Assembly: GCA_976226885.1 (NCBI GenBank)
Contig: OZ320316.1
Span: 111,600,001-111,664,000 of the forward strand
Length of the DNA stretch: 64,000 nt
Source of the DNA: Iphione sp. A-MEVVRFRX5
Lineage: Eukaryota
Direction of reading: 5' to 3'
Part shown: in pieces, positions 34,313 through 63,998 of the stretch
Layout of the letters: each line of letters begins with the position of its first letter
Numbering within the stretch: the first letter of the stretch is position 1
Program-made: the position numbers and the translations under genes
Notes under the pieces: model-generated
Seen by the model: only the letters and a program-made list of their open reading frames with translations
What the model was told of the DNA's origin: nothing
Databases searched by the model: none

Positions 34313-35720
34313 TTTTTTTTTTTTTTTTGAAAAGGCATCTGCCAGTTTATTTCTGAGGTGATTGACATAGTGATACAAAAGGAGATGCTTTTGGTGATTT
34401 TTAAGAAAGACATTGATAAGAGCAACAACAACATTGAATGAATACAATAGGAAAATACATTACTACAATAGGGAACACTAACAATAACATGAATGAATAA
34501 ATGAATAAATAAATAAGGGTGGAGAGTTTACAATTCATCAAAAATATATTCCCACACCTGAAATTTAGAGGGAAGACCCCTAAATTTCCAAACATCACGT
34601 TCAAGAAGTAACAGTTGTTTGAACTCCTTAAGCCAAGAGTGTAAATGAAAGGTAGCATTATCAAATCGTTTTTGCCTAAAGATAAAAAATTTACCCCATA
34701 ACAAGAGATAATTGATCTGAAGCTTGTTTTTGTATCCTTTTCGAACCCCAAACAAAAATTCACGAATTTTTAATTGAAAAAGAGACTCTTGAGTGACCCT
34801 ATACCACCATGATAAAATTGTTTCCCAAAACTTCTGTGAGATAGGACATTCAATAAAAAAGTGATTAAATCGTCATAACCTTGACAGTATGAACAGGTAG
34901 GCGAATCTAACAATTTCCTTTTATCAAGGAAAGCATTGCAAGGAATAATATTATTTACAAGTTTGTAATGAAAAGTTTGCCATTTCGTGCTGATAGTTAT
35001 AATCATCATCAAGTAAATTAGTAGCTGTATCCATCCAATAGTCTTGACCTGCTGGAGTTGATAGAAGTTGTCGAATAAGCAGCCAGTAAATGTCTTTTGG
35101 AGAGAGTCTAAGAATATTAGTGGCAACTCCATTAAATTGACAAAGAAGAGAATTTGTTTGATGGTGGCCAGATGAGGATTTAAGAATTTGAATTTGGTCC
35201 CATGAGGGAATGCATTTAAACAAATTGTAGTCCTGAAGAGAAAGATCAATTTCAAAATTTCGATTAAGGTATGTTAAAGGAACAAAATCATAATTACTCC
35301 AGATGTCACCTATGGAGGTAATGCCAGCATGTTGACATTTTCTTTGTAGTGATGCACACCTTAAATGATTACAAAAATCATCATCCCAAAGGGGATCACT
35401 TAAGATCACTTCTGGTAACTCTGATTTTATACAGTACACCTTTTTCCATGTCTGTAATACCTCTTTTCCATAAGGCCAGTTCACAGAACAATGAGATTTT
35501 TTACATTTACAGTGAAAAAGTATTTGTACAGATGAAACATTGAATAAGGCCTCAAGGATAGGATCTATTGGAAGGAAAATTCGGTTAACCATCCTGTTAA
35601 CTTGAAATAGTCGGTTGGCCTTAAAACGGCAATGGAGATCCGCCAACTTGATGCCTCCATCCTTAATGTCTTGAATAATAAAACTTCCCCATGAAGATGA
35701 CTTCCTCAAGCTGGTGCTGC
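34313..35720 (-). mobile_element. 5'-truncated L1/Tx1-type LINE (ORF2 C-terminus, 3' UTR, polyA)
   Basis: DGGIKLADL..RFKA, post-RT zinc finger TKWQTFHYKLVNNIIPCN.FL..RK..DSPTCSYC, and AATAAA about 15 nt before an A16 tail (T-run 34313-34328 on +). Confidence 0.85.
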
Positions 35721-36579
35721 CATCTAGATTTAATTCTTGTAGGCCCAGGTCCCAGAAATGCAGCCAAGAGTGGCTTTGTTTAGGTCACCGACATGAAATA
35801 AATTTTCTCACTAGGAAAGGCATACTGCAGGCAAGTCGCTGGTTGGAACCTTTATTTCGTGAATGTACAGATCAGGACTGAAAAATAAAATGAATACCGG
35901 TACTGAAATAGGTTGATTACACTATTTACAGAGTATAGTGTCACGGCCATCCATTACACCATTACAATTTTAACATGTATTTCCTTGCCGGCCGGTGTTT
36001 CTTGATAGCTTGAAACCCCTTGGAGTTGCAAATAAAATTTCTAGTTTCCGTAGTATGTATATGGACAGATCTATGCCGGTCACACACCCTGTAACTAGCT
36101 GGTATGCGTGGGTGTGTGTATGTTTGTGTATGTTGGGGCCAGGGTGGGGCCAGGAGGGTGGGGGGGGGCGGGGGGCCGGGAGGTCAACTCCATCACATAG
36201 TTACGGATCTAATAAGGTATGGCCAAAGCAGTTTGGGGAAAAAATACTTAGTCCCAGGCTCGAAACCAGTCCATTCATAGTATGATTAGTCCGAAAAAAC
36301 GGTAGTTGGACCGAAACGTGATTCACAGAGGAGTAAAATTACCGGTATAGTCGGCGGAACACGCTACAGAACAGACAGTAGAGATGGCCCCTCGATATGT
36401 AACATATTATCATGACCGCTCTCTTTACTCGTGAATTCCAACATTTCTACTTTGTAACAATGGTTTCATCAGGCGACTACGTGTACTCCATGCACTTAAA
36501 AAAGATCGGCCTATTTTTAACAAACTACTTATAAGGGTTTGGTGACAGCTACTCTTGTCAGTGCAAACCTGTCAACCTC

Positions 36580-37317
36580 TCACGCAAGACGCCACTCAAA
36601 GTATACTATAAATGAATATTCATGAGCCGCCATCAGGAGACTTTCGAGCCTTCTGATTGGCTTCTTATGAAAAATTCCTCCGCGACGCAACGAATAATTC
36701 AATGAATGAAAAAAGTAGAAACAGTGTCTAAAGCCAGGGACATGGCCCGTTTTATTACCCAACTAAGTGTCTCAGACTTCGTCGTTGCAAGAATGGCGAT
36801 TTTCAGGGCGAACGTCGTGAGAAAGTGGGAGTTTATGTGAAGAAGTAGTTCGGTTCGGTGCGGCGGCCTGCTGGCAGGACGAGGTCACCCATGTCTAACC
36901 GCCATCCCACATAGTACATGGCGTGATCGTTCGAGTAATGATTATTCATGAGATTAAGTTGAGATACTTTACCCCACCCACTCCCGAGATTTTCTTTGAC
37001 AACTGCAAGCGGCCAATATTTATACATTCAGACGGAAATTCTACCTCGAGAACCGAGCAGCACGGGTCATACCAGTGAACCGCTTCAGCGACCGAGGAGG
37101 TTCGGCTTGTCAAACGAAGGAAAAGTGGAGTAACTTTATTTTCCTGTATGGGAGGAAGGCGAGAAAGTGAAACAGCGCTGACCTAGAATAGATCATCGAC
37201 AGCTTCATTCCCGCCTCCCCCGGTCCACCTTGTAGACCGTGCGTGTTCTAAGGAGTACGGAGCCAGATAAGAGCCGGACTTTTGACAACAGACGGAAAGA
37301 GACAACGTCCCCCAAGT
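36580..37317 (+). promoter_or_regulatory. Putative distal promoter and 5' UTR of the receptor
   Basis: CpG-enriched relative to its flanks; reverse CCAAT (ATTGG) near 36656; directly upstream of exon 1a. Confidence 0.4.
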
Positions 37318-37396
37318 ATGGGTCCTTTTACGAGAATCACACTTCTCTTATCGGTGTGTATTTGTGTCGGCTTCTTGAACGTCCTGTCGGTTGAAG
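37318..37396 (+). CDS. LpR: Distal first coding exon 1a, signal peptide [26 protein letters not shown], phase 1
   Basis: ATG, hydrophobic core, GAA G|gtaagt donor; phase matches the LA1 exon. Confidence 0.82.
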
Positions 37397-40300
37397 GTAA
37401 GTTCTCCTTATCGTGTTCTTGAGTTTTTTACAAGTCCACACACACAGACACTGACATGTGGCGGTGGCAGGGCCATGGACCGTGTATCAAGCCGGTCTTC
37501 CTTCAATTTGAAGTTTGAACGCGATTTTAACAGGGTTGACTATTAATAATGTATTGCTAAACGACGGGAGACGTATCAGAAATTGAAATAATGACTAACA
37601 TTTCTTAAACGGTGTCTTTTCGAGGATGGACTACACGTTACATACCTGACTTTTTTTTAATTTGACAGACCGGCTTCTTCGACTGTGAACCGCGTGGTTC
37701 GCTAAAACTGCCACCGTCGGTACACTCGAAATGAAAAGCCAGTTCTGTCGCGGTTTTAAACATGAACAATAGGCCAAGTTTTGTTCATTGAAAATAAATT
37801 TCTTTTGTGTTAAAAGGACGCTGTGAGGGTCGGCAGTTTGAATGTGCCAACCGCGACAAATGCATTCCAGTCTCGTGGCAATGCGACGGCGAACACGATT
37901 GTGACGACGAATCTGACGAACACGGATGTGGTAAGTGTGTAGAAGGAGAAGAAGAGGCAGAAAATGTCTTGAACTTTGGGTCTGTTTTCTGTGTTTTTCG
38001 GGTGAGGAAAAGGGCAGTCTGTTAGAGGTGGGATTGGGTGGAGCCGCCGCCGGCCCCCGGTCGGTCGGTGGTGTGATCGGCTGACGTGTAACTATAGTAC
38101 CAGCAGGACCAACATAGCACGCACCCCAACCACACCTTAGCTTACACGGCATCATGAGTCGGTCAAATATATCAAACTCACCACCAGCGCATTTCCACTC
38201 ACAAAAAGGGGAACCGACATGCAGGTAGGCATGACTTGTCGAATACGAACCGTTAAAAGAAGCGAAATGGCGAGAAAGAGACCCGAAACATGCTTTTGGC
38301 AGCCTGCCAATGTCCATGACTCACGTATCATTGGGCGATTGTTGTTGAGCTGTGATTGTTTCGCTGGCTGTCGGGGGGCCAGCAATGCAATCTTGGTTAG
38401 TGTCTGGTTTCCAAGTTCTGACAACAGGAAGGAGGAAGAGAAAAATCCCCGGAATGTGCACAGTGAAAAAAGAAACAAAAACCCTCTTCGTTTCCAACTA
38501 TGTCCGGTCAGTGACAGTCAAGTGTCGGGAGAAATGAACATGTCAATCTCTCTGTTCTTGTTGTATTCGTAAGGAGTACTTAACGGGATTGAGAGTGAGA
38601 TAAGTGGTCGTTGTTGGGACTTGGGGGAGATAATCCGACAAGAATAAGCTTATTATGAGTGATACTTTCGACGTTATCACAGTCGTGGAGATGGTAATCT
38701 CCAGTGATAACAACCACCACTCGATATATATACATACATCTGTACACATGTAAATATGACACTGTGAGAGACAGGAAGGGTAGGTTACTCCTTGCATAAA
38801 CTATTAGGTTCATTGTCAGCGAATAATGTGATGCATGCATTGATGTGAGTAGGTAGACAACAATATGTACCGAGAGGTTCTTGTAGTTGTTTTCTCATAC
38901 TTTTTTTTTGAGACTGTCTAGATTATATTCAACAGAGGCCCACCTCAAGGTCGGAGACTACAATCACGTTGGATGCATTAGTTTCTAGGTCAGGAGGGAG
39001 GCAGGCGTGGGGTGGGGGTGAGGTGAGGGCGTGGTCGTCAGCTCAGCAAATGATTTGAGATTTGCTGAGACCTACTTTTAACTAGACCCATGCACATGTA
39101 TATCTTCCTCTTTGGTGTACATTGAGTTTCAGTATGATCAGTGACGCTGGGAAAAGGTTGGGGGTGGGTGTGAAGAACATGACATGAAGGAGCGGCAGCG
39201 GAGGGGAAGAAATCCGAGGAGAAGGGGATAATTTCATCCAGATAAGCTGTAGAACATCCCCGAGACAGAATGAGGAGAAGGCGGCGAGTACAATATACCA
39301 AGTTTGCCTCGGTCCGCCATGTGTTTGTCGATTCGCTTGGTAAAGTTTGTTTTTTCCATTGAGACAGGCCACAGTTTGCTCAGTCGCATCAGACTTAATT
39401 TGCTCAGAAAATGTAGTGACTCGTAAGTCTCCTTGGCAGCTGCTGCTCCTCCTCCCTCCTCCTTGGCCGAGGAGGAGAGATGCTGGAGTGGACAAACAAT
39501 GGTTTTTGTTTGCCCCCCCCCCCCTTTTCACCTCCTCCTCCTTCTGGCCTCGGTGCGTGATTGTAAACGGTAACCGATAGGTGCAGGAACTGTTGGTGAT
39601 AGGGTATCAATGGCCTATCGTGTCGTCGTCGGAAATCCGGCTCACCGCCGCTCAAGTCTGGACTTTTCTCAACCGGTATTTTGGTTCCCCATTGGTAACC
39701 GATACGGCCAAGTGGCCCCAACGAAACATGTACCCTCCCCTCCTTTCCCCGACCCCCTTTCCCCTGACTCACACACACCAGCTCTTTCCCCTCAGGTTCG
39801 AGTTTTTTTTATTCCCAATACCTCTTTTATCATCAAGCTCCCGACCTGCTCCTCCTCCTCCTCCGAGCTCTCAACCCCTCCCCCCACCCACTTTTCCTGT
39901 CTCCCCCCCCCCCCTGTCTCTCTTCTCTCTGGTCCCTTGGCTCCGCGTCTCCAACACCCACGTGGAATGCGGGGAATCTGATGGANNNNNNNNNNNNNNN
40001 NNNNNNNNNNNNNNNNNNNNNNNNNNNNNNNNNNNNNNNNNNNNNNNNNNNNNNNNNNNNNNNNNNNNNNNNNNNNNNNNNNNNNNNNNNNNNNNNNNNN
40101 NNNNNNNNNNNNNAGAGAAGGTAGTGGGATGCCAAAGGAATGGTCAAGAAGCTCAGGTTTGTAAGACGACACCTCCCCCCCCAAAACAAACAGGACAACC
40201 AGGCGAATGAACTCGGAATAAACCCAAAGAGTAAAGAGAGAAAGGGGGTCGGGGGGTCAGAGCCTGAGCGACCCCACCAAGGTCAAGACAAGGGGAAGGG

Positions 40301-49300: not shown

Positions 49301-52300
49301 GTTCTGGCCTTTATTGTTCCACCCAAGCCTCCATCCTCTTTTGTGTCAACAGATAGGTCACGATCATTCGTTATCCAGATGAAATCGACCTTGACGCAAT
49401 TAGTTCGATCGTTTGCACACGAGGGGGCGACTACATAAAAATAAAACAATTGCGGGCACCAGTTGAGGCCCCTTCCATGAGAGACATTCCCTCAACCCAC
49501 ATCCACACACCCAGACATCTGGTCATCCTTCAGTAGCCCACCCCCACCCCCGTGAGTGTAACTACTGGCACTACCCAAAAAAAAAACCCCCTTAAATCGA
49601 CTGCTCCACCCGTTTTCAAGTGAAGGAAGCCCGATAATAAGAAATACAAAAAGAACATGCTCGCCATTAATGTCACATGCGTTCCCTTGGTGATAGCATC
49701 AATTCGCGTGACTAGATGGCAGGCTGGATAGCATTTTGCCCCAACCAATCGGCCCATCTCTCGTCCAGATGTGACTGGTCAGCTGACGACGACGACAACG
49801 AGACGGGGATGGGCTGGGGGTGCGTTCGGCAGAGTGACGCCTGTAGCGCGCTCGGGGGCCGGGCCGCTTGACGCCATGGTGGGTTTACGAACGCGCCAGT
49901 CTGTCTCGCCCTCGCCTGAACGGCGCACATCGGTCGTTAATGTATGCAGGCCGACCTGGCGCTGACCTAGATAAGGCGGCCAATCAGCGCGCCGGCGGAG
50001 GGTGAGGCGAGCATTTCGGGTGCATGCTGCTTATAGTCGACGATCTGCCTTCCATCATGGCGAAGCCGTCGTTTACGATGACCAACACCGTGCTGCTCGG
50101 CGCGATTTTCCTGCTGACCCTGACGGACCGAACGCACCAGTATGGTGAGTAAAGATATCCACACTTCTCGAGGGGGTCGACTCGGGTGGCGAGAAAGAAC
50201 GGGTATTTTTTAAAAACTCGCACGGCGGAGGGAGAGACTGGACGAGCGAACAAAGCCGGACATATTCTCTCACAAGGTCGTCCAGCTTGCTGGGGCCCTG
50301 CTGGACACGCCTCATTTCTCGGGGGCGACGACGACGACGGGCGATGTGGGAGCAAATCCTCCATTTAATAGCGTCATGGCAAACCCGTTCCGTTATAAAA
50401 ATATACATCTTAATTTGGCGACCGCGAAATGACCCTGTTTCTTACATAAATTCCACGCCTGCACCAGCCATCGTTTTCAAGCTTGTAGGTTGAGCAAGAG
50501 TGTTTGAAAAAAAGGGGGTCACAAGACTGTGCAGAGAGGGGGCTGGGCCTTTAAAATGTAGTCCGTGCACATATATAGGGGACGAAAAACGGGGGGGGGG
50601 GGTAATTGTGTACACAGGAGAAGAGAGAACTAGTTCTGCCTGTACAGTGGAGGGTAAATAGTCCCGACCTTGCAAATGTTCCCATTTCGGTGTGGAAATG
50701 GTGGTGGTGGTGGGCAAAAAAGGGACTACGTGGTATTTGGGGGCCAGGAGAGGAAGAATTGCACAAGAGCACCGAAAAAAACCGGTAGCAGATGCGCAGA
50801 TCTGAAATATATGTACATACATGTATCCTGCAGCTTGTTAAGCTTCCAATCTACTATCCTATGTATTCTGTAGAATAATGGTTGAGGGTTTTCGTGACCA
50901 ATTCTTAAAATTTCGTAATTTTCTAAAATATTTTTTTCTTTTTCTCTGAATAGCGGCGAAGACCTGTGCGAGCACGGAGGTGCACTGCAACGCGAGCGAG
51001 ATGTGCATCCTGAAGCGCTGGCAGTGTGATGGCGACGCCGACTGCGAGGACGGCTCCGACGAGGACCCGGCCCTCTGCCGTATGTAGACATCTCTCTGCC
51101 AGTGGTCATAGTTTTACCAGCTATACACCCCGCTTTACATCCCGCTGTAAAATTGTAAAGTAGATCAGAGGGTGCAGTGCACAGTCGTCAATCTGGAGGA
51201 GTACTTGAGAGGCGCGGTTTTTGGTCAAATTAATGTGTCTAATACAGGAGTGTGGTTTTATTATATTTTATTTTATTCCAACGTTGAACATTCCTCTCCT
51301 CGTCCTATGAAATGACCCCGATTCACTCAGGCGCTACCACCTCACGTCACGCTTCAGTACCCCCGAGGTTGAACAGAACTTTCCCTTGTCACCTGAATGG
51401 AGGCGGTGACGCGCTAGCACAGCCTGGCCTCTTTATTTACTCTCCTTTTTTCCTGTTTTTTTTATTTATAGAATATATTCTGAAAATGATCCTGGCGAAG
51501 TTGTGTATACGCCGCAGTTCATTAAAAACCGTTTATTTTTTTCATATTTATAATATTTGGTGGGTTTTTTTTCTTGCAGAAAAGAAAACCTGCGCCCCCG
51601 ACCAGTTCGCCTGTGGACAAGAAGGGATGTGCATCCCACAGAACTGGCGCTGCGACGAGCAGCCCGACTGCCCGGACGGCACCGACGAGCACAACTGCAG
51701 TAAGTAGATGGGACCGCGAACGAAATCCACCACGACCAGCAGCAGCAGCAGCCCTGGGAGGAGAAACCCCCGGGGGGGCTGAGGGGGGGGGGGGGCAAAA
51801 CGTTACGTTGGCTGGCCAATGCATGTAACGTGAAAATCACACACAAACAATACAAAGTGGAAAGCTTTTATGTGTGTGTGTGGGGGGCGGGGGGCGTTGT
51901 TTTAACGCAGTTGCAACAGCTTGGCCGGTAGATGCGAGATAAGTGTGAACGCGAACGCACCAAAGGTATACTGGTCTATTCTGCCTGTGTTGTCCCTACC
52001 CACAGACGTGAGAGAACAGAACTTTGCCACGTCTTATCATAGTCTTCCTGTGTAGATGATTGCTCCCCCATCGTCCTTTTCATGATCCGTGGAGTCTTTT
52101 TAAGAAGGCGACCATACAAAACAAACTTCTCTCTAGAAGACCAGCCTGTGCCTGTTGTGATCCAGTAGGCATGGACTGTGACTATAATAAAGTATGTGTA
52201 CTCTCACTAGACAGCGAAGGTAGAAGAAAGGTCCCCTATGTACACTGTTGCACATGCTGCCCTCATCTTGTTCACAATTGACGGACTGCAGGTATCCTGT

Positions 52301-55300
52301 GGTAACGGTCTGTTCTTAACATGGCGATGCTAAAAATAACCACAATTGAAGACTCATTTTCAAACATGGCTGTTCCTACAACAATGATGGCTACTCCTGC
52401 AACAATGAACCCCCCAGGAGGAGAGGAGGAGTGNNNNNNNNNNNNNNNNNNNNNNNNNNNNNNNNNNNNNNNNNNNNNNNNNNNNNNNNNNNNNNNNNNN
52501 NNNNNNNNNNNNNNNNNNNNNNNNNNNNNNNNNNNNNNNNNNNNNNNNNNNNNNNNNNNNNNNNNNNNNNNNNNNNNNNNNNNNNNNNNNNNNNNNNNNN
52601 NNNNNNNNNNNNNNNNNNNNNNNNNNNNNNNNNNNNNNNNNNNNNNNNNNNNNNNNNNNNNNNNNNNNNNNNNNNNNNNNNNNNNNNNNNNNNNNNNNNN
52701 NNNNNNNNNNNNNNNNNNNNNNNNCGCACACACACACCTCTTGAATTGCATCGAGCAATGTTGTTGTTTTTTTCATCGTGAGTTGCTCATTGCCTCCCGT
52801 CTGTCTACAGCTGATGTGACCTGCTCGGTGGACGAGTTCTCCTGCGGTAACGGCAAGTGCATCAGCCTCAAGTGGCACTGCGACCGCGACGACGACTGCG
52901 GCGACAATTCGGACGAGCGCAACTGTCCCGAGCTGACCTGCTCCTCGAAGGAGTTCCTCTGCGCCAACGCCAAGTGCATCCCCGAGCGCTGGAGGTGCGA
53001 CGGCGACGTCGACTGCACCGACCAGTCGGACGAGCAGAACTGCCCGGCCTCGACGGCCGAGTCGCGCTGCGACAAGAACGAGTTCACCTGCAACTCTGGG
53101 CACTGCATCCACAAGGCGTGGGCCTGCGACGGAGACACGGACTGCCAGGATGGCTCCGACGAGGAGAACTGTGAGTGGCGGTTCGTTTGACCAACCCTTT
53201 TTATTTCTTGTCCTTTTTTGGGGGAGAGTTGCTCACCTATGTGGGTCGTTGGTACCACTATCCAATCTTAAACGAGTACCCGTTCTTGCGTCAGAGTGCA
53301 AATGGTGATGGGGGTTGGGGGGACTAGGAGAGAAAGACTGCTTGGAATAAGAAGGAAAAAAACAGGAGCCAGTGTAAGGATCATATGAGAGACATTTAGA
53401 ACACAAGTAGAATATCCTAAAGTCTTACTAGTGTCAAGTCCAGGATTCAGAAACTGTTGTCCCCCCCCTCCCTTTGGAATAGTGTTGTGCTTGAGAATAC
53501 ATCATTAAATATTGTTCATTGCTTGTTTCCAGGTGAACACTTCACATGCCCACCCGGCATGTTCACCTGTAAGACGTCGAACACCTCGGGGCCCCAGTGC
53601 ATCTTGAGCCTCTACGAATGCAACGGCCACACCGAATGCCACGACGGATCCGATGAGGAAGACTGTCGTAAGTAGTTGCTCTCTCTTCTCGTTGATGTAT
53701 TCGCCTGTAAACACGAACTGATCTTGGGAAATTAGAGAGGACAGATCTCCAGTAAAAAAAATCCAGGTTATCGCAGGGGAGATCAGACCAGGGCGGAGAC
53801 CGCAGCTTGGTCCAGTCCCACAGATGATCATTCACGTGAGAGTTGACTGTAATGCATGTTCAGAAGTCTTTATGTAGGGGAGATTAACACTAGCGTCTGT
53901 GGACTGTGGTGTTAGAACAGCCGCTATATCCTCCCGAGATACGTGTGGTCCCTCCATTATAACAGTACAGCTGCAGGTCGAAACTTACATGTAACTGGGT
54001 CTTTATTTCTCTCTCTGTGTAGCTACAGCCGCACCCAAGTGTGACATTCACACGCAGTTCGACTGCAGCAGCGGCGGCGGCACACAGTGCATCGACGTCA
54101 AGTTGGTGTGTAACCATCACGACGACTGCGGCGGTGGCGCCGACGAGGATCCGAGGATCTGCAACGTCAACCGCACCAACCCTTGCCTGCAGGAGAATGG
54201 CGGCTGTACCCACATCTGCAACAACACCTCCTACAACGGCCACTTCTGCACCTGCCGGCCCGGCTACCGGCTCCTGCCCGACAACCGCACCTGCGAGGAC
54301 ATCGACGAATGCCAGGAGCTGGGCGCCTGCTCGCAGGAGTGCCAGAACGTGCACGGCCACTACAAGTGCAGCTGCGCCGAGGGTTACCTGCTCGACCCTA
54401 ACAACCGCCACCTGTGCCGCGCCTACGCCGAGCCCAAGCTGGTCTTCGCCAACCGCCACGACATCCGCGAGTACCGCATCCGCAGCCACCACCTGCTCAA
54501 CCTGGTGGGCCACCAGCGCTCGGCCGTGGCGCTCGACTTCGACTACCGCCGCAGCCGCATGTACTGGTCGGACGTGGCGCAGGAGCGCATCCTCATGGCC
54601 AACCTGAGCGGCGTGGACCACGGCGACATGCAGGCCACCTCGCAGCAGGTGGTGAAGGACGACATCAGCACGCCCGACGGCATCGCTCTCGACTGGATCC
54701 ACAACAACCTCTACTGGACGGACACGGGCAAGGACCGCATCGAGGTGATCAGTCTCGACAGTGGCCACCGCTCGGTGCTCATCGAACAAGACCTGGAGGA
54801 GCCACGGGCCATTGTACTCGACCCCAGGGACCACCAAGGGTAAGTTGAGCTCGATAGGAGTGATGTGAGGATAGAGAGGGAGATCATCAAATAACAAGGT
54901 TAGAAGGGGTAGGGACCTGAGGGACGACCAGGGGTTAGTTGAGAGGGAGAGTAATGATATGCCAAGGATGGAGAGGGAGATCATCAAATAACAAGGTTCT
55001 AAAGAAGTGAGGTGGGACCTGAGGGATGACCAGGGGTTAGTTGAGAGGGAGAGTAATGATATGCCAAGGATGGAGAGGGAGATCATCAAATAACAAGGTT
55101 AGAAGTGAGGTGGGACCTGAGGGATGACCAGGGGTTAGTTGAGAGGGAAAGAATGATATGCCGAGGATGGAGAGGGAGATCATCGATAACAAGGTTAGAA
55201 GGGGGTGGGACCTGAGGGATGACCAGGGTTTAGTTGAGAGGGAGAGTAATGATATGCCGAGGATGGAGAGGGAGATCATCAAATAACAAGGTTAGAAGGG

Positions 55301-58300
55301 GGTGGGGACCTGAGGGATGACCAGGGTTTAGTTGAGAGGGAGAGTAATGATATGCCGAGGATGGAGAGGGAGAAGACCAATAACAAGGTTAGAGAGGGTG
55401 GGGACCTGAGGGATACAGTTGAGTGGGGGAAAGAACCAATGACACAGATAGAGCGGTTTGGATACGAGTTGAGTGTGAAAGGGCTGCTGATGATGAGAAC
55501 ATGATTCCAAAATAATACTGCCGACTATTTTAAAGCACTGTCCTGTTTGTATTGTAATGATGTTTGCTTGCTAGTTGACTCGATCGGATTGATAAAGATC
55601 TCTTCTCTTCAACCCCCCACCCCCCCCCCACCCCACAGCTTCATGTACTGGACGGACTGGGGAGAGGACGCCCGGATTGAGAAGGCGGGCATGAACGGCG
55701 ACCGCGCCCGGGCCATCGTGCGCGGCAACATCCAGTGGCCGAACGGCCTGGCCATCGACTACATGTCGGACCGCCTCTACTGGGTCGACGCCAAGCTGCA
55801 CCTGATCGAGAGCTCCGACCTGGAAGGCCTGCACCGGCGCGTGGTGCTGAGCACGGCGCAGTTCCTGCACCACCCCTTCGCCCTCGCCGTCTTCGAGGAC
55901 ACCGTCTACTGGACCGACTGGGACACCGAGTCCGTGCACAGCGCCAGCAAGTTCAACGGCTCCAACATCGGCACGCTGGTGACGGGGCTGATCACGCCCA
56001 TGGACGTGCACGTCTACCACCCGCTCAAGCAGCCGGACGCCAGCCGGCGCTGCGGTCGCGACAACGGCGGCTGCTCGCACCTGTGCCTGCCGTCGCCCTA
56101 CCTGAGCGCGCAGTCGGCCAACTACTCGTGCCACTGTCCGCACGGCGTGAAGCTCATGGACGACATGAAGACGTGCATGATGCCAGGTGAGAGAGAGAGA
56201 GAGCAGCTCGGCAGCTCCATATATGGTCATGGTTAGCCTCCCCCCCTCCTCCCTCCCACCTCCTTAACTCCCACGTCCAGGACCACCCCGCCCGTCCCCG
56301 CTCCTCCTCCTCCTCTTCCTCCCCCCCCCCCTCTCACTCGGTAGCATAGTTTTAGTTCTAATTTAGCCTAAAGCATAGAACCAAGTCTCGGCGGTGGTGA
56401 CTGATAACAAAACCTACCGCCACGATCAGCTAAGCGTGGTCATCTCACAATAGTCGCATGACGTTGTAGTAATAACTTGTCTACTACTACTACTCCTACT
56501 GCTCGTCGCTAATAATAGTGTCCAGAGATTCTTTTCGTAATGCCGCTGCAGTCCTGACATAACCAGCCTGTTCATTGCTATGTCATTCACTACCGCATGA
56601 AGGTACCAGTTGTTTCTACTCCCCTCCCCTCTTATACCCCGACATTGTCCTAGGCTCCCACCCAGTCTGGGCAGCCTGCCACAGCGGCACGCGATTGTAC
56701 TCCTTCTAATGACTTGTTTTGCATTTTCGCTTCTGACAACAGCGACTACAACAGTTTCAACCACAGTGACTGTTAGCTCGAGAAAAGTCCCCAACGGTGA
56801 GAATGATGCGTGTTGTTATCGGATGTTGTGTTTGGGTCTATGTAGATTTACCAATGTCCCTGGTGTGTGGTTCCTTTCCTTTGTTTTTTTGTGTTTTTTT
56901 GTGTTTTTTTTTTATACTTGTTCCTCCTCTCCTTAAAGTGTTTTAGTGACCCTTCATTTCATTTTCATCAAACTAACTCATCAAACTAACTCACTAACTG
57001 CAACTATTTCTGTCTGAATGCCTTAAGTCACTTGCATGGATGAATACTTTTGGTCATTTGCATGGGTGGCCCTTTTTTAACAGAGTGTTTAAAGCTTTAA
57101 AAGGTAAAGAAGAAAAAAAATAGTAATGAAATGATCCATGATATTTTCTCATCTGAACCATCTTTGAATTATTTCTAAATAATTGTAAGTTATACGTTAA
57201 GAATAACTATTTTGGTGCTGAGGATCGTTGTTTTAAATCATAATTTAACATCTCGTTTGGATCTGTCCAGTTCCGCAACCTTTTTTTTCAAAGAATCGCT
57301 GTAGATATGCTGTGTATAGATGGCTTTTTTTGCTGGCTATTGAGTAAACTGCCTATTTTGTCTAATTTCATTAAGGATTGATTTTTTTTAAAACCGACGT
57401 CATTTTAAATTACAACACATGATATCAGCTACTTTTAGAGACGGGAGACCAAGTATAATTCAGCTATACGCATGAAAGCTGGACAAGCATATGTACAGAG
57501 AAGGGAATGGATCGTTTTAGAATAGATCAACCGTCTCGGCATGTGTTTTAGGAGTGTCATAAGAATCTTAAGCATGGGGTAATATATAAATTGTGAAACC
57601 TTGCACATTGCTACTGATGTCCACCCACCCCCATCATATGCATGTCTCACCTCTGTTTTATGTCTGTCGTTGCTACAGGTGTCGCGACAGTTACCACCAG
57701 CAGTAACACAGACAACCCGGATGAATACAACAAGCACAGGAGTCATGACGACACGGAGCAGGATGTTGGCAAGGTGGCTGGAATCGTCATCGCTGTTGTT
57801 GTCTTCGTGCTGCTGCTAGCAGCTGGGGTAAGTGGAAGCTGCCATTTCATCCATAGTCTTGTTTGTTCAGATCATGTGTGGTAAGTGGAAGTTGCCTTCC
57901 CGCCCATTGTCTTGTTAGTTCAGATCATGCGGGGTAAGTGGAAGTTACCTTCCTGCCCCTTGTCTTGTTAGTTCAGATCATGCGGGGTAAGTGGAAGTTA
58001 CCTTCCCACCCATTGTCTTGTTAGTTCAGATCATGCGGGGTAAGTGGAAGCTGCCTTTCCGTCCATAATCTTGTTAGTTCAGATCATGCGGGGAAGTGGA
58101 AGCTGCCTTCTTGTCCATAATCTAGTCACTTCAGATCATGTACAGGGGGGAAAATTCTCACAGCCAATAAGAAAATATTTGAAACTTTTTTTATATACCT
58201 GGTTACAATGCACGACTGATAGTACAATATCTAAAATCAAAGTCAGGAGACAACATTGGAATATGCCTAGTAACATTGACATTTCTGAGGCTTTTAATGT

Positions 58301-61330: not shown

Positions 61331-63998
61331 CACACCCACACCCACACCCACCCCCCTGTGGCAAATAGCACAACTGCCATATATATCCCCAACCAATAAC
61401 AGTAAATTACACCCAGCAAGGCTCTGTCGCTGATTGTAAATACGATTAGGTACAGGCAGGACCAATGGACGTTTCCTCCTGCACAAGGAGTGACGTGGTT
61501 GGTGGGTTCATGCTGTGATGGTTTTTTTTATTCTGGAGCGTGTGTGTGTGGGGGTGGGTGGGGGGGAGAGGACCTTAGGAATGCTGCTGTCCGACCGTCG
61601 GACCTTCCGGCACAATACCGTGGGTCTGTTCACTATTCCTTAAACTAGTGCATCAAATGCTGCTGTGATTTCCAAATACATGTATGGTGTTTCACTGTAC
61701 GGAATCTTGACATGGACCTATTTGACGTATTTCTCTATCATTCCAAGTGATTTAAAGGTTAAATTTGTGTGTGTTTTAATACTTTGATTACACACACTGA
61801 CCTCAATGCACCCAGTTTGTACAATGTTGTATAGTCGTGTTTCACCCAGGTAGAACTAATTACTTAATGGTTGTTGGATTTTATTTTCTCCTCGTGTGCA
61901 GATCTCCTATTACGTGTACCGGTCGTATATGAGGAGGAACTTCCGCAGCATGAACTTCGACAATCCCGTCTACCGGAAGACGACGGAGGACCAGTTCAGT
62001 CTAGAGAAGAACCAGTACCAGCCCTCGCAAACGCTGCCCTCGGTGAGTTACTCGAGCGAGCTGCTCCCAAGCTCTCGCCTACTACTACTACTCCTACTAT
62101 AACTACTACTCCTCGTAGATTTAAGGCCACACTCCCCTGCATGCGAATCGTGAAGATAACGATGCTACGTGTAAATAACACAACCGCTTCAGAACAACGT
62201 AGTGGGAAATTCTACATTGAAAAGTATATAATACATGTATATATATTTGTGTGTATATACATGTGTATATATATATGAATTAATCGTAATTGTTGATCAA
62301 ATGATTAATACATGTATAACGAATGGTGTTAATTGTTCCAAATTCATGTCGACATCGGTTAAATATGATCATATAGACAACAAGTAATCATGTATAATAT
62401 ATAAAGCATGGTGCGAAACTCTAGTATGAGCCATATTTAAAAAAACCGTGAGAAACATACGTAGTTATTCTTCAGTAAGATTTTAAGGGTAATACACCTG
62501 CTGGTAATTGGGCCATTTCTGTAGAGAGGGGGACGGCGGGAGATATTTCTTTGGGCCGTGTTTTCCCGGGAAGTTTTTTTTTTTTCCGGCAGATTTTAAC
62601 AATAACTTAAACCCCTTCTTCACATGCTAGAACGAGTGCATCACTGCGCGTCTTTTGTATGGCCATACTAAAGCATTTCGTTTGATTCGTCCTGTGTTTG
62701 TCAGTATTGGCTGGAGCCAGCTCCCCCTCCTCGTACTACCATCTTCTACTGCTTGTTCTCGTCCCTGAATGACCTAATGTATCCTCATATCAAGCCCCCT
62801 CCCCCCCCCCCCCTTCGTTTTCGTTCTGGGAATGACCTAGTGTATACTCATATTGAGCCCCCCTCTTTGTACCACCACCATGTCCTACTGCTCGTTCTTG
62901 TCCTGGGAATGACTTAGTGTATACTCATATCGAGCCCCCCTCTTCGTACCACCACCATGTCCTACTGCTCGTTCTTGTCCTGGGAATGACCTAGTGTATA
63001 CTCATATTGAGCCCCCCTCTTTGTACCACCACCATGTCCTACTGCTCGTTCTTGTCCCAGGAATGACCTAGTGTATACTCATATTGAGCCCCCCCCCCCC
63101 CTTCATACCACCAACACATCCTACTGCTCATTCTTGTCCCAGGAATGACCTAGTGTATACTCATATCGAGCCCCCCCCCTCTTTGTACTACCACCACGTC
63201 CTACTGCTCATTCTCATCCCGGGAATGACCTGTTGTATACTCATATGGAGCCCCCCTCTTCGTACCACCAACACGTCCTACTGCTCATTCTTGTCCCGGG
63301 AATGACCTTGTGTATACTCATATCGAGCTCCCCTCTTCGTACCACCACCATGTCCTACTGCTCATTCTTGTCCTGGGAATAACCTAGTGTATACTCATAT
63401 CGAGCTCCCCTCTTGGTACCACCAACACGTCCTACTGCTCATTCTCATCCCAGGAATGTCCTCATGTATTCTCATATCGAGCCCCCCCTCTTTGTACTAC
63501 CACCATGTCCTACTGCTCCTTCTCATCCCGGGAATGACCTGTTGTATACTCATATGAAGCCCCCCTCTTGGTACCACCAACACGTCCTACTGCTCATTCT
63601 CATCCCAGGAATGACCTTGTGTATACTCATATCGAAGCCCCTACAGTCCTACTGTTCGTTCTTGTCCTGGGAATGATCTAGTGTATAATACTCATATCGA
63701 GGCCCCCCCCCCCCCCCTCCTCGCACTACCACCACGTCCTACTGTTCGTTCTTGTCCTGGGAATGATCTAGTGTATAATACTCATATCGAGCTCCCCTCT
63801 TGGTACCACCAACACGTCCTACTGCTCATTCTCATCCCAGGAATGACCTTGTGTATACTCATATCGAAGCCCCTACAGTCCTACTGTTCGTTCTTGTCCT
63901 GGGAATGATCTAGTGTATAATACTCATATCGAGCTTCTGTTTGTTGCATGTTGCAGACGCTAGAGCCATTGACGTCTCCGTCTAATGAGGTCGCTTGA
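37318..63998 (+). CDS. LpR: LDLR-family receptor of VLDLR/lipophorin-receptor type (8 LA, EGF-A/B, 6x YWTD, EGF-C, O-linked stalk, TM, FDNPVY)
   Basis: Exons 37318-37396, 37817-37930, 50954-51079, 51580-51699, 52811-53170, 53533-53667, 54023-54839, 55639-56186, 56743-56796, 57679-57827, 61902-62042 and 63957-63998 total 2685 nt in frame (894 aa). The domain order is that of VLDLR/LpR. The family call is secure; the symbol reflects recalled similarity of the tail to insect LpR. Confidence 0.92.
37817..37930 (+). CDS. LpR: LA1 exon ([37 protein letters not shown]), phase 1-1
   Basis: six Cys and the DCxDxSDE motif; taaaag|GA...G|gtaagt. Confidence 0.93.
39986..40113. other. Assembly gap
   Basis: N-run. 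Confidence 1.
42361..42868. repeat. Near-perfect tandem triplication of about 175 bp
   Basis: GTCATTTCTACCTGTGAGTACAAC at 42361, 42537 and 42712. Confidence 0.92.
43520..43930. repeat. Minisatellite of alternating 75-79-bp monomers
   Basis: AATGTTAC at about 43586, 43661, 43736, 43815 and 43890, with A/B alternation. Confidence 0.85.
45085..45310. repeat. 33-bp tandem repeat, about 7 copies
   Basis: ACTGATGACACTACTCATAGCATATTCCCCACT; explains the periodic ORFs at 44902-45399. Confidence 0.92.
46765..47930. repeat. Purine-rich satellite, 97-bp period
   Basis: GGAGAAACAGA at about 46941, 47038, 47135 and 47232; + strand is almost all A/G. Confidence 0.92.
48820..49082. repeat. 46-bp tandem repeat, about 6 copies
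   Basis: GAATCCAGAACACCTTCCTTCTGG recurs every 46 bp. Confidence 0.85.
49741..50056 (+). promoter_or_regulatory. Putative proximal (intronic) promoter of the receptor
   Basis: CpG-rich block with CCAAT at about 49745 and 49980, directly upstream of exon 1b. Confidence 0.5.
50057..50144 (+). CDS. LpR: Proximal alternative first coding exon 1b, signal-peptide-like [29 protein letters not shown], phase 1
   Basis: ccatcATGG start context, hydrophobic core, TAT G|gtgagt donor; phase matches LA2; lies in a CpG-rich island. Confidence 0.75.
50954..51079 (+). CDS. LpR: LA2 exon ([40 protein letters not shown])
   Basis: gaatag|CG...C|gtatgt; six Cys, DGSDE; frame absent from the ORF track. Confidence 0.93.
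51580..51699 (+). CDS. LpR: LA3 exon ([37 protein letters not shown])
   Basis: ttgcag|AA...A|gtaagt. Confidence 0.94.
52434..52724. other. Assembly gap between the LA3 and LA4-6 exons
   Basis: N-run. Confidence 1.
52811..53170 (+). CDS. LpR: LA4-LA6 exon
   Basis: ctacag|CT...T|gtgagt; three canonical LA repeats within ORF 52321..53190. Confidence 0.95.
53533..53667 (+). CDS. LpR: LA7 exon
   Basis: ttccag|GT...C|gtaagt; CPPGMFTC...[23 protein letters not shown]. Confidence 0.92.
54023..54839 (+). CDS. LpR: Exon with LA8, EGF-A, Ca-binding EGF-B and the first three propeller blades
   Basis: gtgtag|CT...GG|gtaagt; CEDIDEC, MYWSD, LYWTD; an in-frame second acceptor at 54029 is possible. Confidence 0.94.
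54860..55420. repeat. Intronic tandem repeat, about 100-bp period
   Basis: GAGGGAGATCATCAAATAACAAGG recurs; explains spurious minus-strand ORFs. Confidence 0.88.
55639..56186 (+). CDS. LpR: Exon with the last three YWTD blades and EGF-C
   Basis: ccacag|C TTC ATG TAC TGG...CCA G|gtgaga; [25 protein letters not shown]. Confidence 0.95.
56743..56796 (+). CDS. LpR: Small Thr/Ser-rich O-glycosylation stalk exon ([18 protein letters not shown]), phase 1-1
   Basis: caacag|CG...AAC G|gtgaga; 54 nt symmetric exon, so it could be skipped. Confidence 0.7.
57679..57827 (+). CDS. LpR: Stalk plus transmembrane exon (...[18 protein letters not shown]), phase 1-0
   Basis: ctacag|GT...GGG|gtaagt; hydrophobic helix. 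Confidence 0.9.
57825..58140. repeat. 53-bp tandem repeat starting at the TM-exon splice donor, about 6 copies
   Basis: GTAAGTGGAAG at 57828, 57881, 57934, 57987 and 58040. Confidence 0.92.
58230..58360 (+). mobile_element. Tiny non-LTR (CR1/Jockey-like) RT relic
   Basis: [28 protein letters not shown] resembles the RT motif D.SKAFD.V.H..L..KL...GI.G. Confidence 0.55.
59927..60504. mobile_element. TA-flanked non-autonomous DNA transposon with about 25-bp imperfect TIRs
   Basis: ta|CAGTCGAATGCTGCATTGTGACCA...TGGTCGCATAGCGGCATTCGACTG|ta. Confidence 0.78.
61902..62042 (+). CDS. LpR: Cytoplasmic tail exon with FDNPVY internalisation signal
   Basis: gtgcag|ATC...TCG|gtgagt; [25 protein letters not shown]. 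Confidence 0.95.
62765..63933. repeat. Tandem repeat, about 78-bp period, filling most of the last intron
   Basis: GGAATGACCTAGTGTATACTCATATCGAGCCCCCC recurs about 15 times. Confidence 0.9.
63957..63998 (+). CDS. LpR: Last coding exon [13 protein letters not shown]
   Basis: ttgcag|ACG...GCT TGA; phase 0 fits the previous donor. Confidence 0.85.
   Translation, partial: TLEPLTSPSNEVA

What the first reader, a model, noticed from the sequence alone, without database searches (positions are those of the whole stretch)
37318..51079. Two alternative signal-peptide exons give 8-LA and 7-LA receptor isoforms, as in Drosophila lpr1/lpr2
Seen: distal exon 1a (37318-37396) and LA1 (37817-37930) sit 13 kb upstream of LA2. 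A second ATG exon with its own hydrophobic leader, phase-1 donor and CpG/CCAAT promoter (50057-50144) lies just before LA2. Predicted products are 894 and 859 aa. LA1 has mixed third-position bases, whereas downstream exons are almost all G/C-ending. Established: Drosophila lipophorin receptors use a distal promoter to add LA1, which is needed for neutral-lipid uptake, and a proximal promoter for LA1-less forms. Inference: the two-promoter ligand switch is either much older than insects or convergent.
Basis: partly seen in the sequence, partly recalled or inferred. Interest (0 to 1): 0.74.

Follow-up and report, generated by a model that had tools for sequence, protein, structure and literature searches.

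The report
Two start exons in worm lipoprotein receptor
An annelid worm's VLDL/lipophorin-type lipoprotein receptor gene has two well-formed alternative start exons that should give receptors with eight or seven ligand-binding repeats, a layout proven in flies and annotated in a feather star, but no RNA data could be found to show that both starts are used.

Summary
The gene is a complete VLDLR/LpR-type receptor. A tree groups it with the annelids Owenia and Capitella.

Exon 1a is orthologous to annelid first exons: its coding part is 79 nt, phase 1, in all three worms.

Exon 1b is very unlikely to be a chance ORF:
- It lies in the locus's only strong non-exonic CpG island and has a CCAAT box.
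- It has a good Kozak context and a GTGAGT donor in the right phase.
- Its leader is as hydrophobic as 1a's.
- It shares the constitutive exons' G/C-ending codon bias (25/29), which 1a and LA1 lack.
- Comparable ORFs occur about twice per 89 kb of control DNA.

The same topology, a leader exon 0.8-1.0 kb before LA2 inside the LA1-LA2 intron, is annotated in the crinoid Antedon. It is conserved but unannotated in Anneissia and present as an unannotated candidate in Capitella. It is absent in Owenia, a sea star, an acorn worm and amphioxus.

No RNA run was listed, so usage, tissue pattern and continuity across the intronic gap remain untested. The fly ligand mechanism cannot simply be transferred. 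Verdict: a probable new member of a known kind. Other notes of this scan concern alternative start exons of other genes, not this one.

The parts
37175..37187 (+). 13-mer GCGCTGACCTAGA, 143 nt upstream of the exon 1a ATG. The second and only other copy is at 49959.
   Evidence: two matches in the window, 0.02 expected. It contains TGACCT, a nuclear-receptor half-site (inference).
37318..37396 (+). Exon 1a, distal start: ATG plus a 26-residue hydrophobic leader, phase-1 donor gtaagt.
   Evidence: The coding part is 79 nt, phase 1, exactly as in Owenia and Capitella.
37817..37930 (+). LA1 exon, 114 nt, phase 1 to 1: one intact LDL-receptor class A module.
   Evidence: PF00057, E=6e-13; same exon type in Owenia, Capitella and Antedon. 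Position identity is ambiguous.
39986..40113 (.). Assembly gap of 128 N inside the LA1-LA2 intron.
   Evidence: Continuity could not be tested and the gap was not filled.
49601..50600 (.). CpG island around exon 1b (GC 0.51-0.62, CpG o/e 1.0-1.24), with CCAAT boxes at 49745 and 49980.
49959..49971 (+). Second copy of the 13-mer GCGCTGACCTAGA, 98 nt upstream of the exon 1b ATG.
50057..50144 (+). Exon 1b, proximal start: ATG, a 29-residue leader with a 12-residue hydrophobic core, phase-1 donor gtgagt, 809 nt before LA2.
50954..51079 (+). LA2 exon, the first exon common to both forms.
51580..51699 (+). LA3 exon.
52434..52724 (.). Second assembly gap (291 N), in the LA3-LA4 intron.
   Evidence: No module is missing relative to orthologues.
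52811..53170 (+). Exon encoding LA4, LA5 and LA6.
53533..53667 (+). LA7 exon.
54023..54839 (+). Exon with LA8, EGF-A, EGF-B and the first YWTD blades.
   Evidence: The same exon end (DPRDxQG) is seen in related exon ORFs.
55639..56186 (+). Exon with the remaining YWTD blades and EGF-C.
56743..56796 (+). Short Thr/Ser-rich (O-linked sugar type) exon. Boundaries are inferred from phase and splice sites.
57679..57827 (+). Transmembrane exon.
61902..62042 (+). Cytoplasmic exon with FDNPVY.
63957..63998 (+). Last coding exon ([13 protein letters not shown] plus stop).
   Evidence: The tail matches lophotrochozoan relatives.

Best explanation
The window holds an intact annelid gene for a VLDLR/ApoER2/lipophorin-receptor-type endocytic receptor, and the gene has two alternative first coding exons.

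**Distal start.** Transcripts that start at 1a splice 1a to LA1 to LA2. They encode an 894-aa receptor with eight LA repeats, the ancestral VLDLR-like form.

**Proximal start.** Transcripts that start in a CpG-island promoter 12 kb downstream, inside the LA1-LA2 intron, begin with exon 1b and splice straight to LA2. They encode an 859-aa receptor with its own signal peptide and seven LA repeats, an LDLR-like count.

**Shown.** The exons, their phases, splice signals, domain content, codon bias and promoter-like composition; the orthology of 1a; and parallel arrangements in other animals.

**Inferred.** That both starts are transcribed; that 1b is the more heavily used start, from its codon bias; and that the loss of LA1 changes ligand choice.
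For: **Gene identity and completeness.** Pfam finds eight LA modules, EGF modules and YWTD repeats. A TM segment and FDNPVY are present. The exon sum is 894 or 859 codons. LA2 to LA8 each score best on the HMM for their own position, built from 16 orthologues.

**1a and LA1 belong to this gene.**
- The coding part of 1a is 79 nt, phase 1, in the window, in Owenia and in Capitella.
- The leader/LA1 junction reads SVEG|RC, against AVES|RC in Owenia.
- All four annotated Owenia proteins run from the signal peptide through LA1 into LA2.
- The Owenia LA1-LA2 intron is also about 13 kb.
- No other LA exon or Pfam-recognisable gene lies in the window's intron.

**1b is a real coding start.**
- Its G/C content at the three codon positions is 0.48, 0.41 and 0.86, like LA2 at 0.59, 0.51 and 0.93. 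P(at least 25 of 29 G/C-ending) is 0.001 at the local GC.
- It has a consensus GTGAGT donor in phase 1.
- An in-frame stop lies 51 nt upstream of its ATG.
- The maximum 10-residue hydropathy is 2.74, against 2.81 for 1a, and both leaders have a +1 n-region and (-3,-1) sites.
- It sits in a CpG island with CCAAT boxes.
- ORFs that pass the same filter occur 2 times in about 89 kb of control sequence, so about 0.02 would be expected within 1 kb of LA2.

**Shared element.** A 13-mer occurs only upstream of both start exons.

**Parallels elsewhere.**
- Antedon X1 and X2 proteins differ in exactly this way.
- The X2 leader exon lies 838 nt before LA2, inside the LA1-LA2 intron.
- A homologous intact ORF is conserved in Anneissia.
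- Capitella has an unannotated signal-peptide ORF with a GTGAGT phase-1 donor 1013 nt before LA2.
- Chironomus isoforms show the insect version.
- PMC4486166 states that Drosophila Lpr2E and Lpr2F carry specific signal peptides and differ by LA-1.
Against: - No transcript evidence exists.
- Continuity across the 128-N gap between LA1 and 1b is unverified.
- Owenia, the best-annotated annelid here, has no 1b-like ORF in its 13-kb intron, and its four isoforms all start at 1a.
- The window's LA1 is not clearly LA1-type.
- LA1 and 1a lack the gene's codon bias. That could mean low usage, but it could also mean decay or a different history.
- 1b's hydrophobic core is short (12 residues), and no SignalP-type predictor was available.
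- The 13-mer was noticed by eye before it was tested.
Confidence: 0.66

Rival explanations
1. Only the distal start is used. The gene makes only 8-LA receptors. 'Exon 1b' is a fortuitous ORF in an intronic CpG island that acts as an enhancer or as the promoter of a non-coding or antisense transcript.
For: No RNA evidence exists for 1b. Owenia has no such exon and annotates only 1a-initiated proteins. In the sample of 176 full-length relatives, 148 are 8-LA proteins that start with LA1. Leader-like ORFs do occur by chance.
Against: A non-coding stretch is not expected to show codon-position G/C of 0.48, 0.41 and 0.86, identical in kind to the constitutive exons, with P about 0.001. The right phase, a consensus donor, a Kozak context and the position 0.8 kb before LA2 all coincide. 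The last matches the annotated crinoid exon and the Capitella candidate. No Pfam-recognisable antisense or nested gene is present.
Confidence: 0.2
2. Only the proximal start belongs to this gene. Exon 1a and LA1 are wrongly scaffolded across the gap, belong to another small gene, or are decaying relics. The receptor is then a 7-LA protein.
For: An unverified gap lies between LA1 and 1b. 1a and LA1 lack the gene's G/C-ending codon bias (34/63 against 85-97% in the other LA and EGF exons). LA1 ties between the LA1 and LA6 profiles. Capitella's GenBank annotation also models 1a+LA1 as a separate 100-aa gene.
Against: 1a has the same 79-nt, phase-1 structure as Owenia's first exon, whose annotated proteins run through LA1 into LA2. 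LA1 is intact, with six Cys, an acidic cage, a Pfam score of 49 bits and perfect splice sites in compatible phase. Order, strand and intron length match Owenia. Nothing else on the + strand of the 13 kb could receive the LA1 donor. The Capitella split is an old ab initio partial model whose 'N-terminus' is intron read-through.
Confidence: 0.09
3. The 1b sequence is an internal cassette exon. It would use the AG at 50035-50036, so the exon starts at 50037, and would be spliced between LA1 and LA2. It would then not be a first exon.
For: One frame-compatible AG exists 20 nt upstream of the ATG, and it would keep phase 1 to 1 with a 108-nt exon.
Against: The polypyrimidine tract is weak (0.6). 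The insert would place a 12-residue hydrophobic stretch in the ectodomain between two LA modules, which no relative shows. The CpG island, the CCAAT box and the in-frame stop just upstream fit a first exon.
Confidence: 0.03

Closest known systems
Drosophila lipophorin receptors lpr1/lpr2, and dipteran LpR generally (Chironomus isoforms seen here; Aedes LpRov/LpRfb with 8 and 7 repeats, Seo et al. 2003, as cited in PMC5897026)
   Same: One gene gives LA1-containing and LA1-less receptors, each with its own signal peptide, joined to a common LA2 (for Chironomus; PMC4486166 for Lpr2E and Lpr2F). The rest of the domain architecture is the same.
   Different: In flies the use of two promoters and the functional difference are experimentally shown. 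Here neither is. The fly LA-1 needs a preceding 16-aa extension domain, conserved only in higher Diptera, for strong LTP binding (PMC4486166), and the annelid protein has no such extension. The leader sequences are not alignable. That the fly isoforms arise from distal and proximal promoters is recalled from Parra-Peralbo & Culi 2011, which I could not open.
Antedon mediterranea (crinoid) VLDLR-like isoforms X1 (XP_071953011) and X2 (XP_071953012)
   Same: The topology is identical. 1a and LA1 come first. A second ATG leader exon follows inside the LA1-LA2 intron, in phase 1 and 838 nt before LA2, against 809 nt in the window. The exons after that are common. The leader exon is conserved in a second crinoid.
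   Different: The crinoid leader exon is longer: 56 codons plus one base, against 29 plus one here. It has a basic spacer after the signal peptide. No sequence similarity to the window's 1b is detectable. The crinoid isoform is a RefSeq model whose RNA support I could not inspect. I found no paper describing it, but I did not search for one specifically.
Vertebrate VLDLR (8 LA) versus LDLR (7 LA)
   Same: The repeat counts are the same, and so is the exon logic: signal exon, single-LA exons, then one exon with three LA repeats. The 7-LA product here has two LA repeats before the triple exon, as LDLR does, and the 8-LA product has three, as VLDLR does (the window's structure; the human exon structure from my own knowledge).
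   Different: In vertebrates the two forms are separate paralogous genes. Here, if the model is right, they would be isoforms of one gene.
Owenia fusiformis and Capitella teleta orthologues (annelids)
   Same: They are the closest named relatives in the E8 tree, in a clade with 94/94 support. They share the same 79-nt exon 1a, an LA1 exon, and a long LA1-LA2 intron in Owenia.
   Different: Owenia has no detectable proximal leader ORF, and its annotated isoforms differ only in the O-linked and tail regions. Capitella has an unannotated candidate.

Membership tests
LDL receptor family, VLDLR/ApoER2/LpR-type core member | N-terminal cluster of 7-8 LDL-receptor class A modules | tested here: met
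   Pfam PF00057 matches every LA exon. The Cys pattern gives eight modules, and LA2-LA8 each score best on the cognate position-specific HMM.
LDL receptor family, VLDLR/ApoER2/LpR-type core member | EGF-precursor homology domain: EGF-A, EGF-B, a YWTD beta-propeller and EGF-C | tested here: met
   PF14670, PF12662, PF07645 and PF00058 match the exons at 54023-54839 and 55639-56186.
LDL receptor family, VLDLR/ApoER2/LpR-type core member | Single transmembrane segment and a cytoplasmic FxNPxY internalisation motif | tested here: met
   The hydrophobic stretch [15 protein letters not shown] and the motif FDNPVY are read in the exons at 57679-57827 and 61902-62042.
LDL receptor family, VLDLR/ApoER2/LpR-type core member | Orthology to named VLDLR-like/LpR proteins | tested here: met
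   The E8 tree places the window with the Owenia and Capitella VLDLR-like proteins (94/94), apart from molluscs, arthropods and deuterostomes. Identities to relatives are 44-60%.
Two-start LA1 switch, as in Drosophila lpr1/lpr2 | Two alternative first coding exons, each with its own start codon and signal peptide | tested here: met
   Met at the DNA level only: two ATG leader exons of equal hydropathy, each with a phase-1 consensus donor.
Two-start LA1 switch, as in Drosophila lpr1/lpr2 | The distal start adds LA1; the proximal start joins directly to LA2 | tested here: met
   The exon order and phases allow exactly these two products. This is predicted, not observed in RNA.
Two-start LA1 switch, as in Drosophila lpr1/lpr2 | Both starts are transcribed from separate promoters | not testable with these tools
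   No RNA run was listed, so read laying could not be used. Indirect signs only: the CpG island and CCAAT box at 1b and the shared 13-mer.
Two-start LA1 switch, as in Drosophila lpr1/lpr2 | LA-1 preceded by the conserved 16-aa extension domain needed for strong LTP binding | tested here: not met
   The predicted signal peptide ends at ...SVEG and Cys1 follows after one residue. PMC4486166 describes the extension as conserved in higher Diptera.
Two-start LA1 switch, as in Drosophila lpr1/lpr2 | LA1-dependent ligand binding and neutral-lipid uptake | not testable with these tools
   This needs binding and uptake assays.
Two-start LA1 switch, as in Drosophila lpr1/lpr2 | LA1 orthologous to LA1 of VLDLR/LpR | tested here: inconclusive
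   The window's LA1 scores 49.8 bits on the LA1 HMM and 50.9 on the LA6 HMM. In a leave-one-out control, 14 of 16 orthologue LA1s were correctly assigned; the Chironomus and Argonauta LA1s also failed. Exon position, phase and the junction with 1a fit LA1.

The most novel reading that the evidence does not exclude
The proximal leader exon just upstream of LA2 is an ancestral bilaterian feature of the single VLDLR/LpR-type gene. It would be homologous in insects, annelids, crinoids and perhaps gastropods, and lost or undetected elsewhere. On that reading, the choice between 8-LA and 7-LA receptors, which vertebrates later fixed in separate VLDLR and LDLR genes, began as a promoter switch within one gene.
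Probability: 0.2. Interest if true: 0.6.

Novelty: new member of a known kind. Interest (0 to 1): 0.42.

Why it matters
If both starts are used, one annelid gene would make both a VLDLR-like 8-repeat receptor and an LDLR-like 7-repeat receptor through promoter choice.

- Lophotrochozoa would then join insects in having this regulatory device, which is annotated but seemingly unremarked in crinoids.
- It gives a concrete, cheap test (5' RACE or long-read cDNA) of whether N-terminal repeat choice is an old way of tuning lipoprotein or yolk uptake.
- It also flags annotation problems: Capitella's gene is split in two, and the alternative leader exons of Anneissia and Capitella are unannotated.

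On present evidence it is a sound gene-model prediction, not a demonstrated mechanism.

Tried and rejected
**RNA evidence.** The look-up of sequencing runs on 50000-56300 listed no RNA run, so read laying could not be used.

**This species' own protein.** The representative search and the word searches found nothing above 60% identity. The species is therefore not in the protein collection, and no annotated isoforms of its own exist there.

**The closest relative with a large contig.** P0335 (54% identity, 244-kb contig) has no DNA available. The P0334 contig is only 1.2 kb.

**JGI metagenome scan.** It returned only distant fragments at 41-61% identity (one at 28%), and none had a recognisable N-terminal region.

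**Sequence continuity across the gap.** Only low-complexity matches were found, with no extended inverted or direct repeat.

**Homology between the two upstream regions.** Nothing beyond the 13-mer. The 13-mer is not found at the Antedon starts. The GATA-type heptamer near both starts occurs at chance frequency.

**Nested genes or RNAs in the 13-kb intron.** There were no Pfam hits for seven ORFs and no Rfam family in the whole window.

**A regional GC explanation for the codon contrast.** Rejected. The flanking introns are 0.36-0.49 GC around the high-GC3 exons.

**A TSS-proximal GC3 gradient.** Rejected. The tail exon, 12 kb downstream of 1b, still has GC3 of 0.87.

**Alternative N-termini among transcript-derived relatives.** The variants differ only in the O-linked region.

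**Capitella's 'TRLQSCLSLAAQ' N-terminus as an alternative leader.** Rejected. It is intron read-through in a partial model.

Exons were searched one by one by reference, and product lengths were obtained by summing exon lengths. In one local script I appended the single Cys whose codon is split by the intron after 53170, purely to delimit the LA6 module. The paper by Parra-Peralbo & Culi 2011 could not be opened.

Full report
**Observation.**

- Exon 1a (37318-37396) opens with ATG, encodes [26 protein letters not shown] plus one base, and ends at a gtaagt donor.
- LA1 (37817-37930) is bounded by ag and gtaagt and encodes one complete LDL-receptor class A module.
- Exon 1b (50057-50144) opens with ATG in the context ccatcATGg, encodes [29 protein letters not shown] plus one base, and ends at gtgagt.
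- LA2 (50954-51079) follows 809 nt later.

Pfam confirms LA modules in every proposed LA exon. It also finds EGF and YWTD modules further on.

I traced the rest of the gene:

| Exon | Coordinates |
|---|---|
| LA3 | 51580-51699 |
| LA4-6 | 52811-53170 |
| LA7 | 53533-53667 |
| LA8 + EGF-A + EGF-B + first YWTD blades | 54023-54839 |
| remaining YWTD blades + EGF-C | 55639-56186 |
| short Thr-rich exon | 56743-56796 |
| transmembrane exon | 57679-57827 |
| FDNPVY exon | 61902-62042 |
| last exon | 63957-63998 |

I only summed lengths.

**The gaps.**

The gap at 39986-40113 lies inside the proposed LA1-LA2 intron, so reading frame is not at stake. The real question is whether the two sides are truly adjacent, and I could not test that. 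No reads were available. The flanks share only low-complexity matches.

Indirect evidence favours adjacency.
- Order, strand and phase of 1a and LA1 are those expected for this gene.
- The linker between LA1 and LA2 has no residues missing relative to orthologues.
- No other LA exon lies between the gap and LA2.
- Owenia's orthologue has a similarly long LA1-LA2 intron of about 13 kb.

A second gap (52434-52724) sits in the LA3-LA4 intron. Here too no module is missing.

**What organism and gene.**

The closest named relatives of the 272-residue LA8-EGF-YWTD exon are VLDLR-like proteins at 44-51% identity. Unnamed exon ORFs from environmental assemblies reach 54-60% and end at the same exon boundary. 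A maximum-likelihood tree of that exon puts the window in a clade with Owenia fusiformis and Capitella teleta (94/94). Molluscs, arthropods and deuterostomes fall outside it. This agrees with earlier notes of the scan that call this genome an annelid.

The gene is the annelid member of the VLDLR/ApoER2/lipophorin-receptor group. LA2 to LA8 each score best on the position-specific HMM for their own position, built from 16 eight-repeat orthologues. LA1 ties between the LA1 profile (49.8 bits) and the LA6 profile (50.9 bits). In a leave-one-out control, 14 of 16 orthologue LA1s were assigned correctly. The window's LA1 is therefore intact but unusually divergent.

**Is 1a/LA1 part of this gene?**

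The coding part of exon 1a is 79 nt and phase 1 in the window, in Owenia and in Capitella. It is 73 nt in the crinoid Antedon. The leader/LA1 junction reads SVEG|RC here and AVES|RC in Owenia. All four annotated Owenia proteins run from the signal peptide through LA1 into LA2. Seven ORFs in the window's 13-kb intron have no Pfam match. The intron is largely satellite arrays, and Rfam finds nothing in the window. I put the chance that 1a and LA1 splice to LA2 at about 0.9.

**Is 1b more than a chance ORF?**

Several independent features say yes.

1. *Codon bias.* G/C content at the three codon positions is 0.48, 0.41 and 0.86. This is the same pattern as LA2 (0.59, 0.51, 0.93) and the other constitutive exons (GC3 of 0.77-0.97). 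The flanking introns of those exons are only 0.36-0.49 GC, so the bias is codon-level and not regional. At the local GC of 0.58, 25 or more G/C-ending codons out of 29 has P = 0.001. By contrast 1a, also a signal-peptide exon, has GC3 of 0.54.
2. *A control scan.* I looked for ATG-initiated ORFs of 46-199 nt with a 10-residue hydropathy of at least 1.9 and a phase-1 GT[AG]AG donor. The scan found 2 in about 89 kb of other window sequence. About 0.3 are therefore expected in the whole intron and about 0.02 within 1 kb of LA2.
3. *Promoter-like surroundings.* 1b sits in the only strong CpG island of the locus that is not explained by GC3-rich exons. CpG o/e is 1.1-1.24 against a window median of 0.54. 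A GGCCAATCAG box lies 77 nt upstream of the ATG.
4. *A closed frame upstream.* An in-frame stop lies 51 nt upstream of the ATG. Only one weak acceptor could make 1b an internal exon instead.
5. *A leader as good as 1a's.* Hydropathy is 2.74 against 2.81. Both have a +1 n-region, and (-3,-1) sites follow the hydrophobic core.

A further oddity is the 13-mer GCGCTGACCTAGA. It occurs exactly twice in the 64 kb, 143 nt upstream of the 1a ATG and 98 nt upstream of the 1b ATG, where 0.02 copies are expected. I saw it by eye first, so the statistic is post hoc. It contains a nuclear-receptor half-site, and that reading is my inference.

**Comparative evidence.**

*Crinoids.* Cluster look-ups showed that the crinoid Antedon mediterranea has two RefSeq isoforms. 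X1 begins with signal-LA1-LA2. X2 begins with a different hydrophobic leader joined directly to LA2. In the Antedon locus the X2 leader exon lies inside the LA1-LA2 intron, in phase 1, 838 nt before LA2. The second crinoid, Anneissia japonica, has only the LA1 form on record here. At the corresponding place, 969 nt before LA2, it holds an intact homologous ORF with a conserved start, donor and upstream sequence.

*Other species.* In Capitella the GenBank models split the gene in two: a 100-aa model with signal and LA1, and a partial model from LA2 onward. The 2.9-kb intron contains an unannotated ORF, MAFLVVLALFGSSVAIAPR, with a GTGAGT phase-1 donor 1013 nt before LA2. A weaker candidate exists in the gastropod Gigantopelta, 750 nt before LA2. 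Owenia, Asterias, Glandiceps and Branchiostoma floridae have none by my criteria.

*Isoform survey.* Chironomus isoforms show the insect version, with distal-leader-LA1 and proximal-leader-LA2 forms. Among the 176 full-length relatives I held, LA2-first proteins with a hydrophobic leader of their own occurred only in Chironomus and Antedon. That sample hides isoforms, because clusters are shown by one representative.

**Comparison with what is known.**

PMC4486166 confirms three points for Drosophila.
- Only LA-1-containing Lpr isoforms bind LTP and mediate lipid uptake.
- Lpr2E and Lpr2F carry specific signal peptides.
- LA-1 alone gives only weak binding. A 16-aa extension in front of it, conserved in higher Diptera, is needed.

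The annelid protein has no such extension. 'Works like lpr1/lpr2' therefore holds for gene architecture, not for the ligand mechanism. The seven- and eight-repeat mosquito variants (Seo et al. 2003) are cited in PMC5897026. The statement that the fly isoforms come from distal and proximal promoters rests on my memory of Parra-Peralbo & Culi 2011, which I could not open.

**Most likely mechanism.**

The gene most likely uses alternative promoters.
- The distal promoter yields the ancestral 8-LA receptor.
- A CpG-island promoter in the LA1-LA2 intron yields a 7-LA receptor with its own signal peptide.

Exon 1b shares the constitutive exons' strong codon bias, and 1a and LA1 do not. I therefore infer that the 1b form is the more heavily translated one and that the LA1 form is restricted in amount or tissue. 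The short Thr-rich exon also lacks the bias. The O-linked region is optional in Owenia's annotated proteins. Both readings are inference. Confidence that both starts are used as modelled is 0.66.

**Rivals.**

| Rival | Confidence |
|---|---|
| 1b unused, only 8-LA receptors made | 0.20 |
| 1a and LA1 not part of the gene | 0.09 |
| 1b as an internal cassette exon | 0.03 |

**Novelty.**

This is a new member of a known kind. The device is established in insects and already sits in a crinoid's RefSeq annotation. Annelid and lophotrochozoan cases appear to be unannotated. Whether the device is ancestral or was gained repeatedly cannot be decided. The distribution is patchy, and the leaders are not alignable between phyla. 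The recurring position 0.75-1.0 kb before LA2 is suggestive only.

Noticed in passing
window 37175-37187 and 49959-49971 (+): The 13-mer GCGCTGACCTAGA occurs only at these two places in the 64 kb, each about 100-140 nt upstream of one of the two candidate start codons. On the reverse strand it reads TCTAGGTCAGCGC, an extended AGGTCA nuclear-receptor half-site. It may be a shared regulatory element.
   Followed up: partly
window, all coding exons of the receptor gene: Third-position G/C splits the exons into two classes. It is 0.77-0.97 in 1b, LA2-LA8, the EGF/YWTD exons and the tail. It is 0.41-0.63 in 1a, LA1, the Thr-rich exon and the TM exon. Flanking introns are 0.36-0.49 GC, so the effect is codon-level. 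The low class includes the exons that are optional in relatives.
   Followed up: partly
L005 (Anneissia japonica) 7696-7873: An unannotated ORF is homologous to the Antedon isoform-X2 leader exon. Its ATG, phase-1 donor and upstream sequence are conserved. The alternative LA1-less start is probably real in crinoids and is missing from the Anneissia protein set that I saw.
   Followed up: yes
L003 (Capitella teleta KB291798) 6430-7248 and 10001 onward; candidate exon 8960-9017: The GenBank models split the receptor gene into a 100-aa signal+LA1 model and a partial model from LA2 onward, whose first residues are intron read-through. A textbook signal-peptide ORF with a GTGAGT phase-1 donor lies between them.
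   Followed up: partly
window 9971-10366 (+): An exon-like ORF matches the FGE-sulfatase domain (PF03781, E=1e-5). By eye it resembles OvoA/EgtB-type sulfoxide synthases. It is probably part of the upstream neighbour gene.
   Followed up: no
window 15201-17400: A second CpG island (GC up to 0.68, o/e up to 1.25) lies upstream of the receptor gene. It is presumably another gene's 5' end. The long ORF there had no Pfam match in the frame tried.
   Followed up: no
window 42360-42868, 45079-45309, 46844-47931, 48821-49087: The LA1-LA2 intron is rich in tandem arrays: 175 nt x 2.9 at 99% identity, 33 nt x 7, a strongly purine-skewed array of about 1 kb with 52/97-nt units, and 46 nt x 5.8.
   Followed up: no
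window 62828-63873: The last intron of the receptor gene is almost filled by a 77-nt tandem array of about 13 copies, with higher-order periods of 232 and 309 nt.
   Followed up: no
window 52434-52724: A second assembly gap (291 N) lies in the LA3-LA4 intron. No LA module is missing relative to orthologues.
   Followed up: partly
window 34954-35784 (-): A 277-aa ORF without a Pfam match lies just upstream of exon 1a. It may be a transposon remnant.
   Followed up: no
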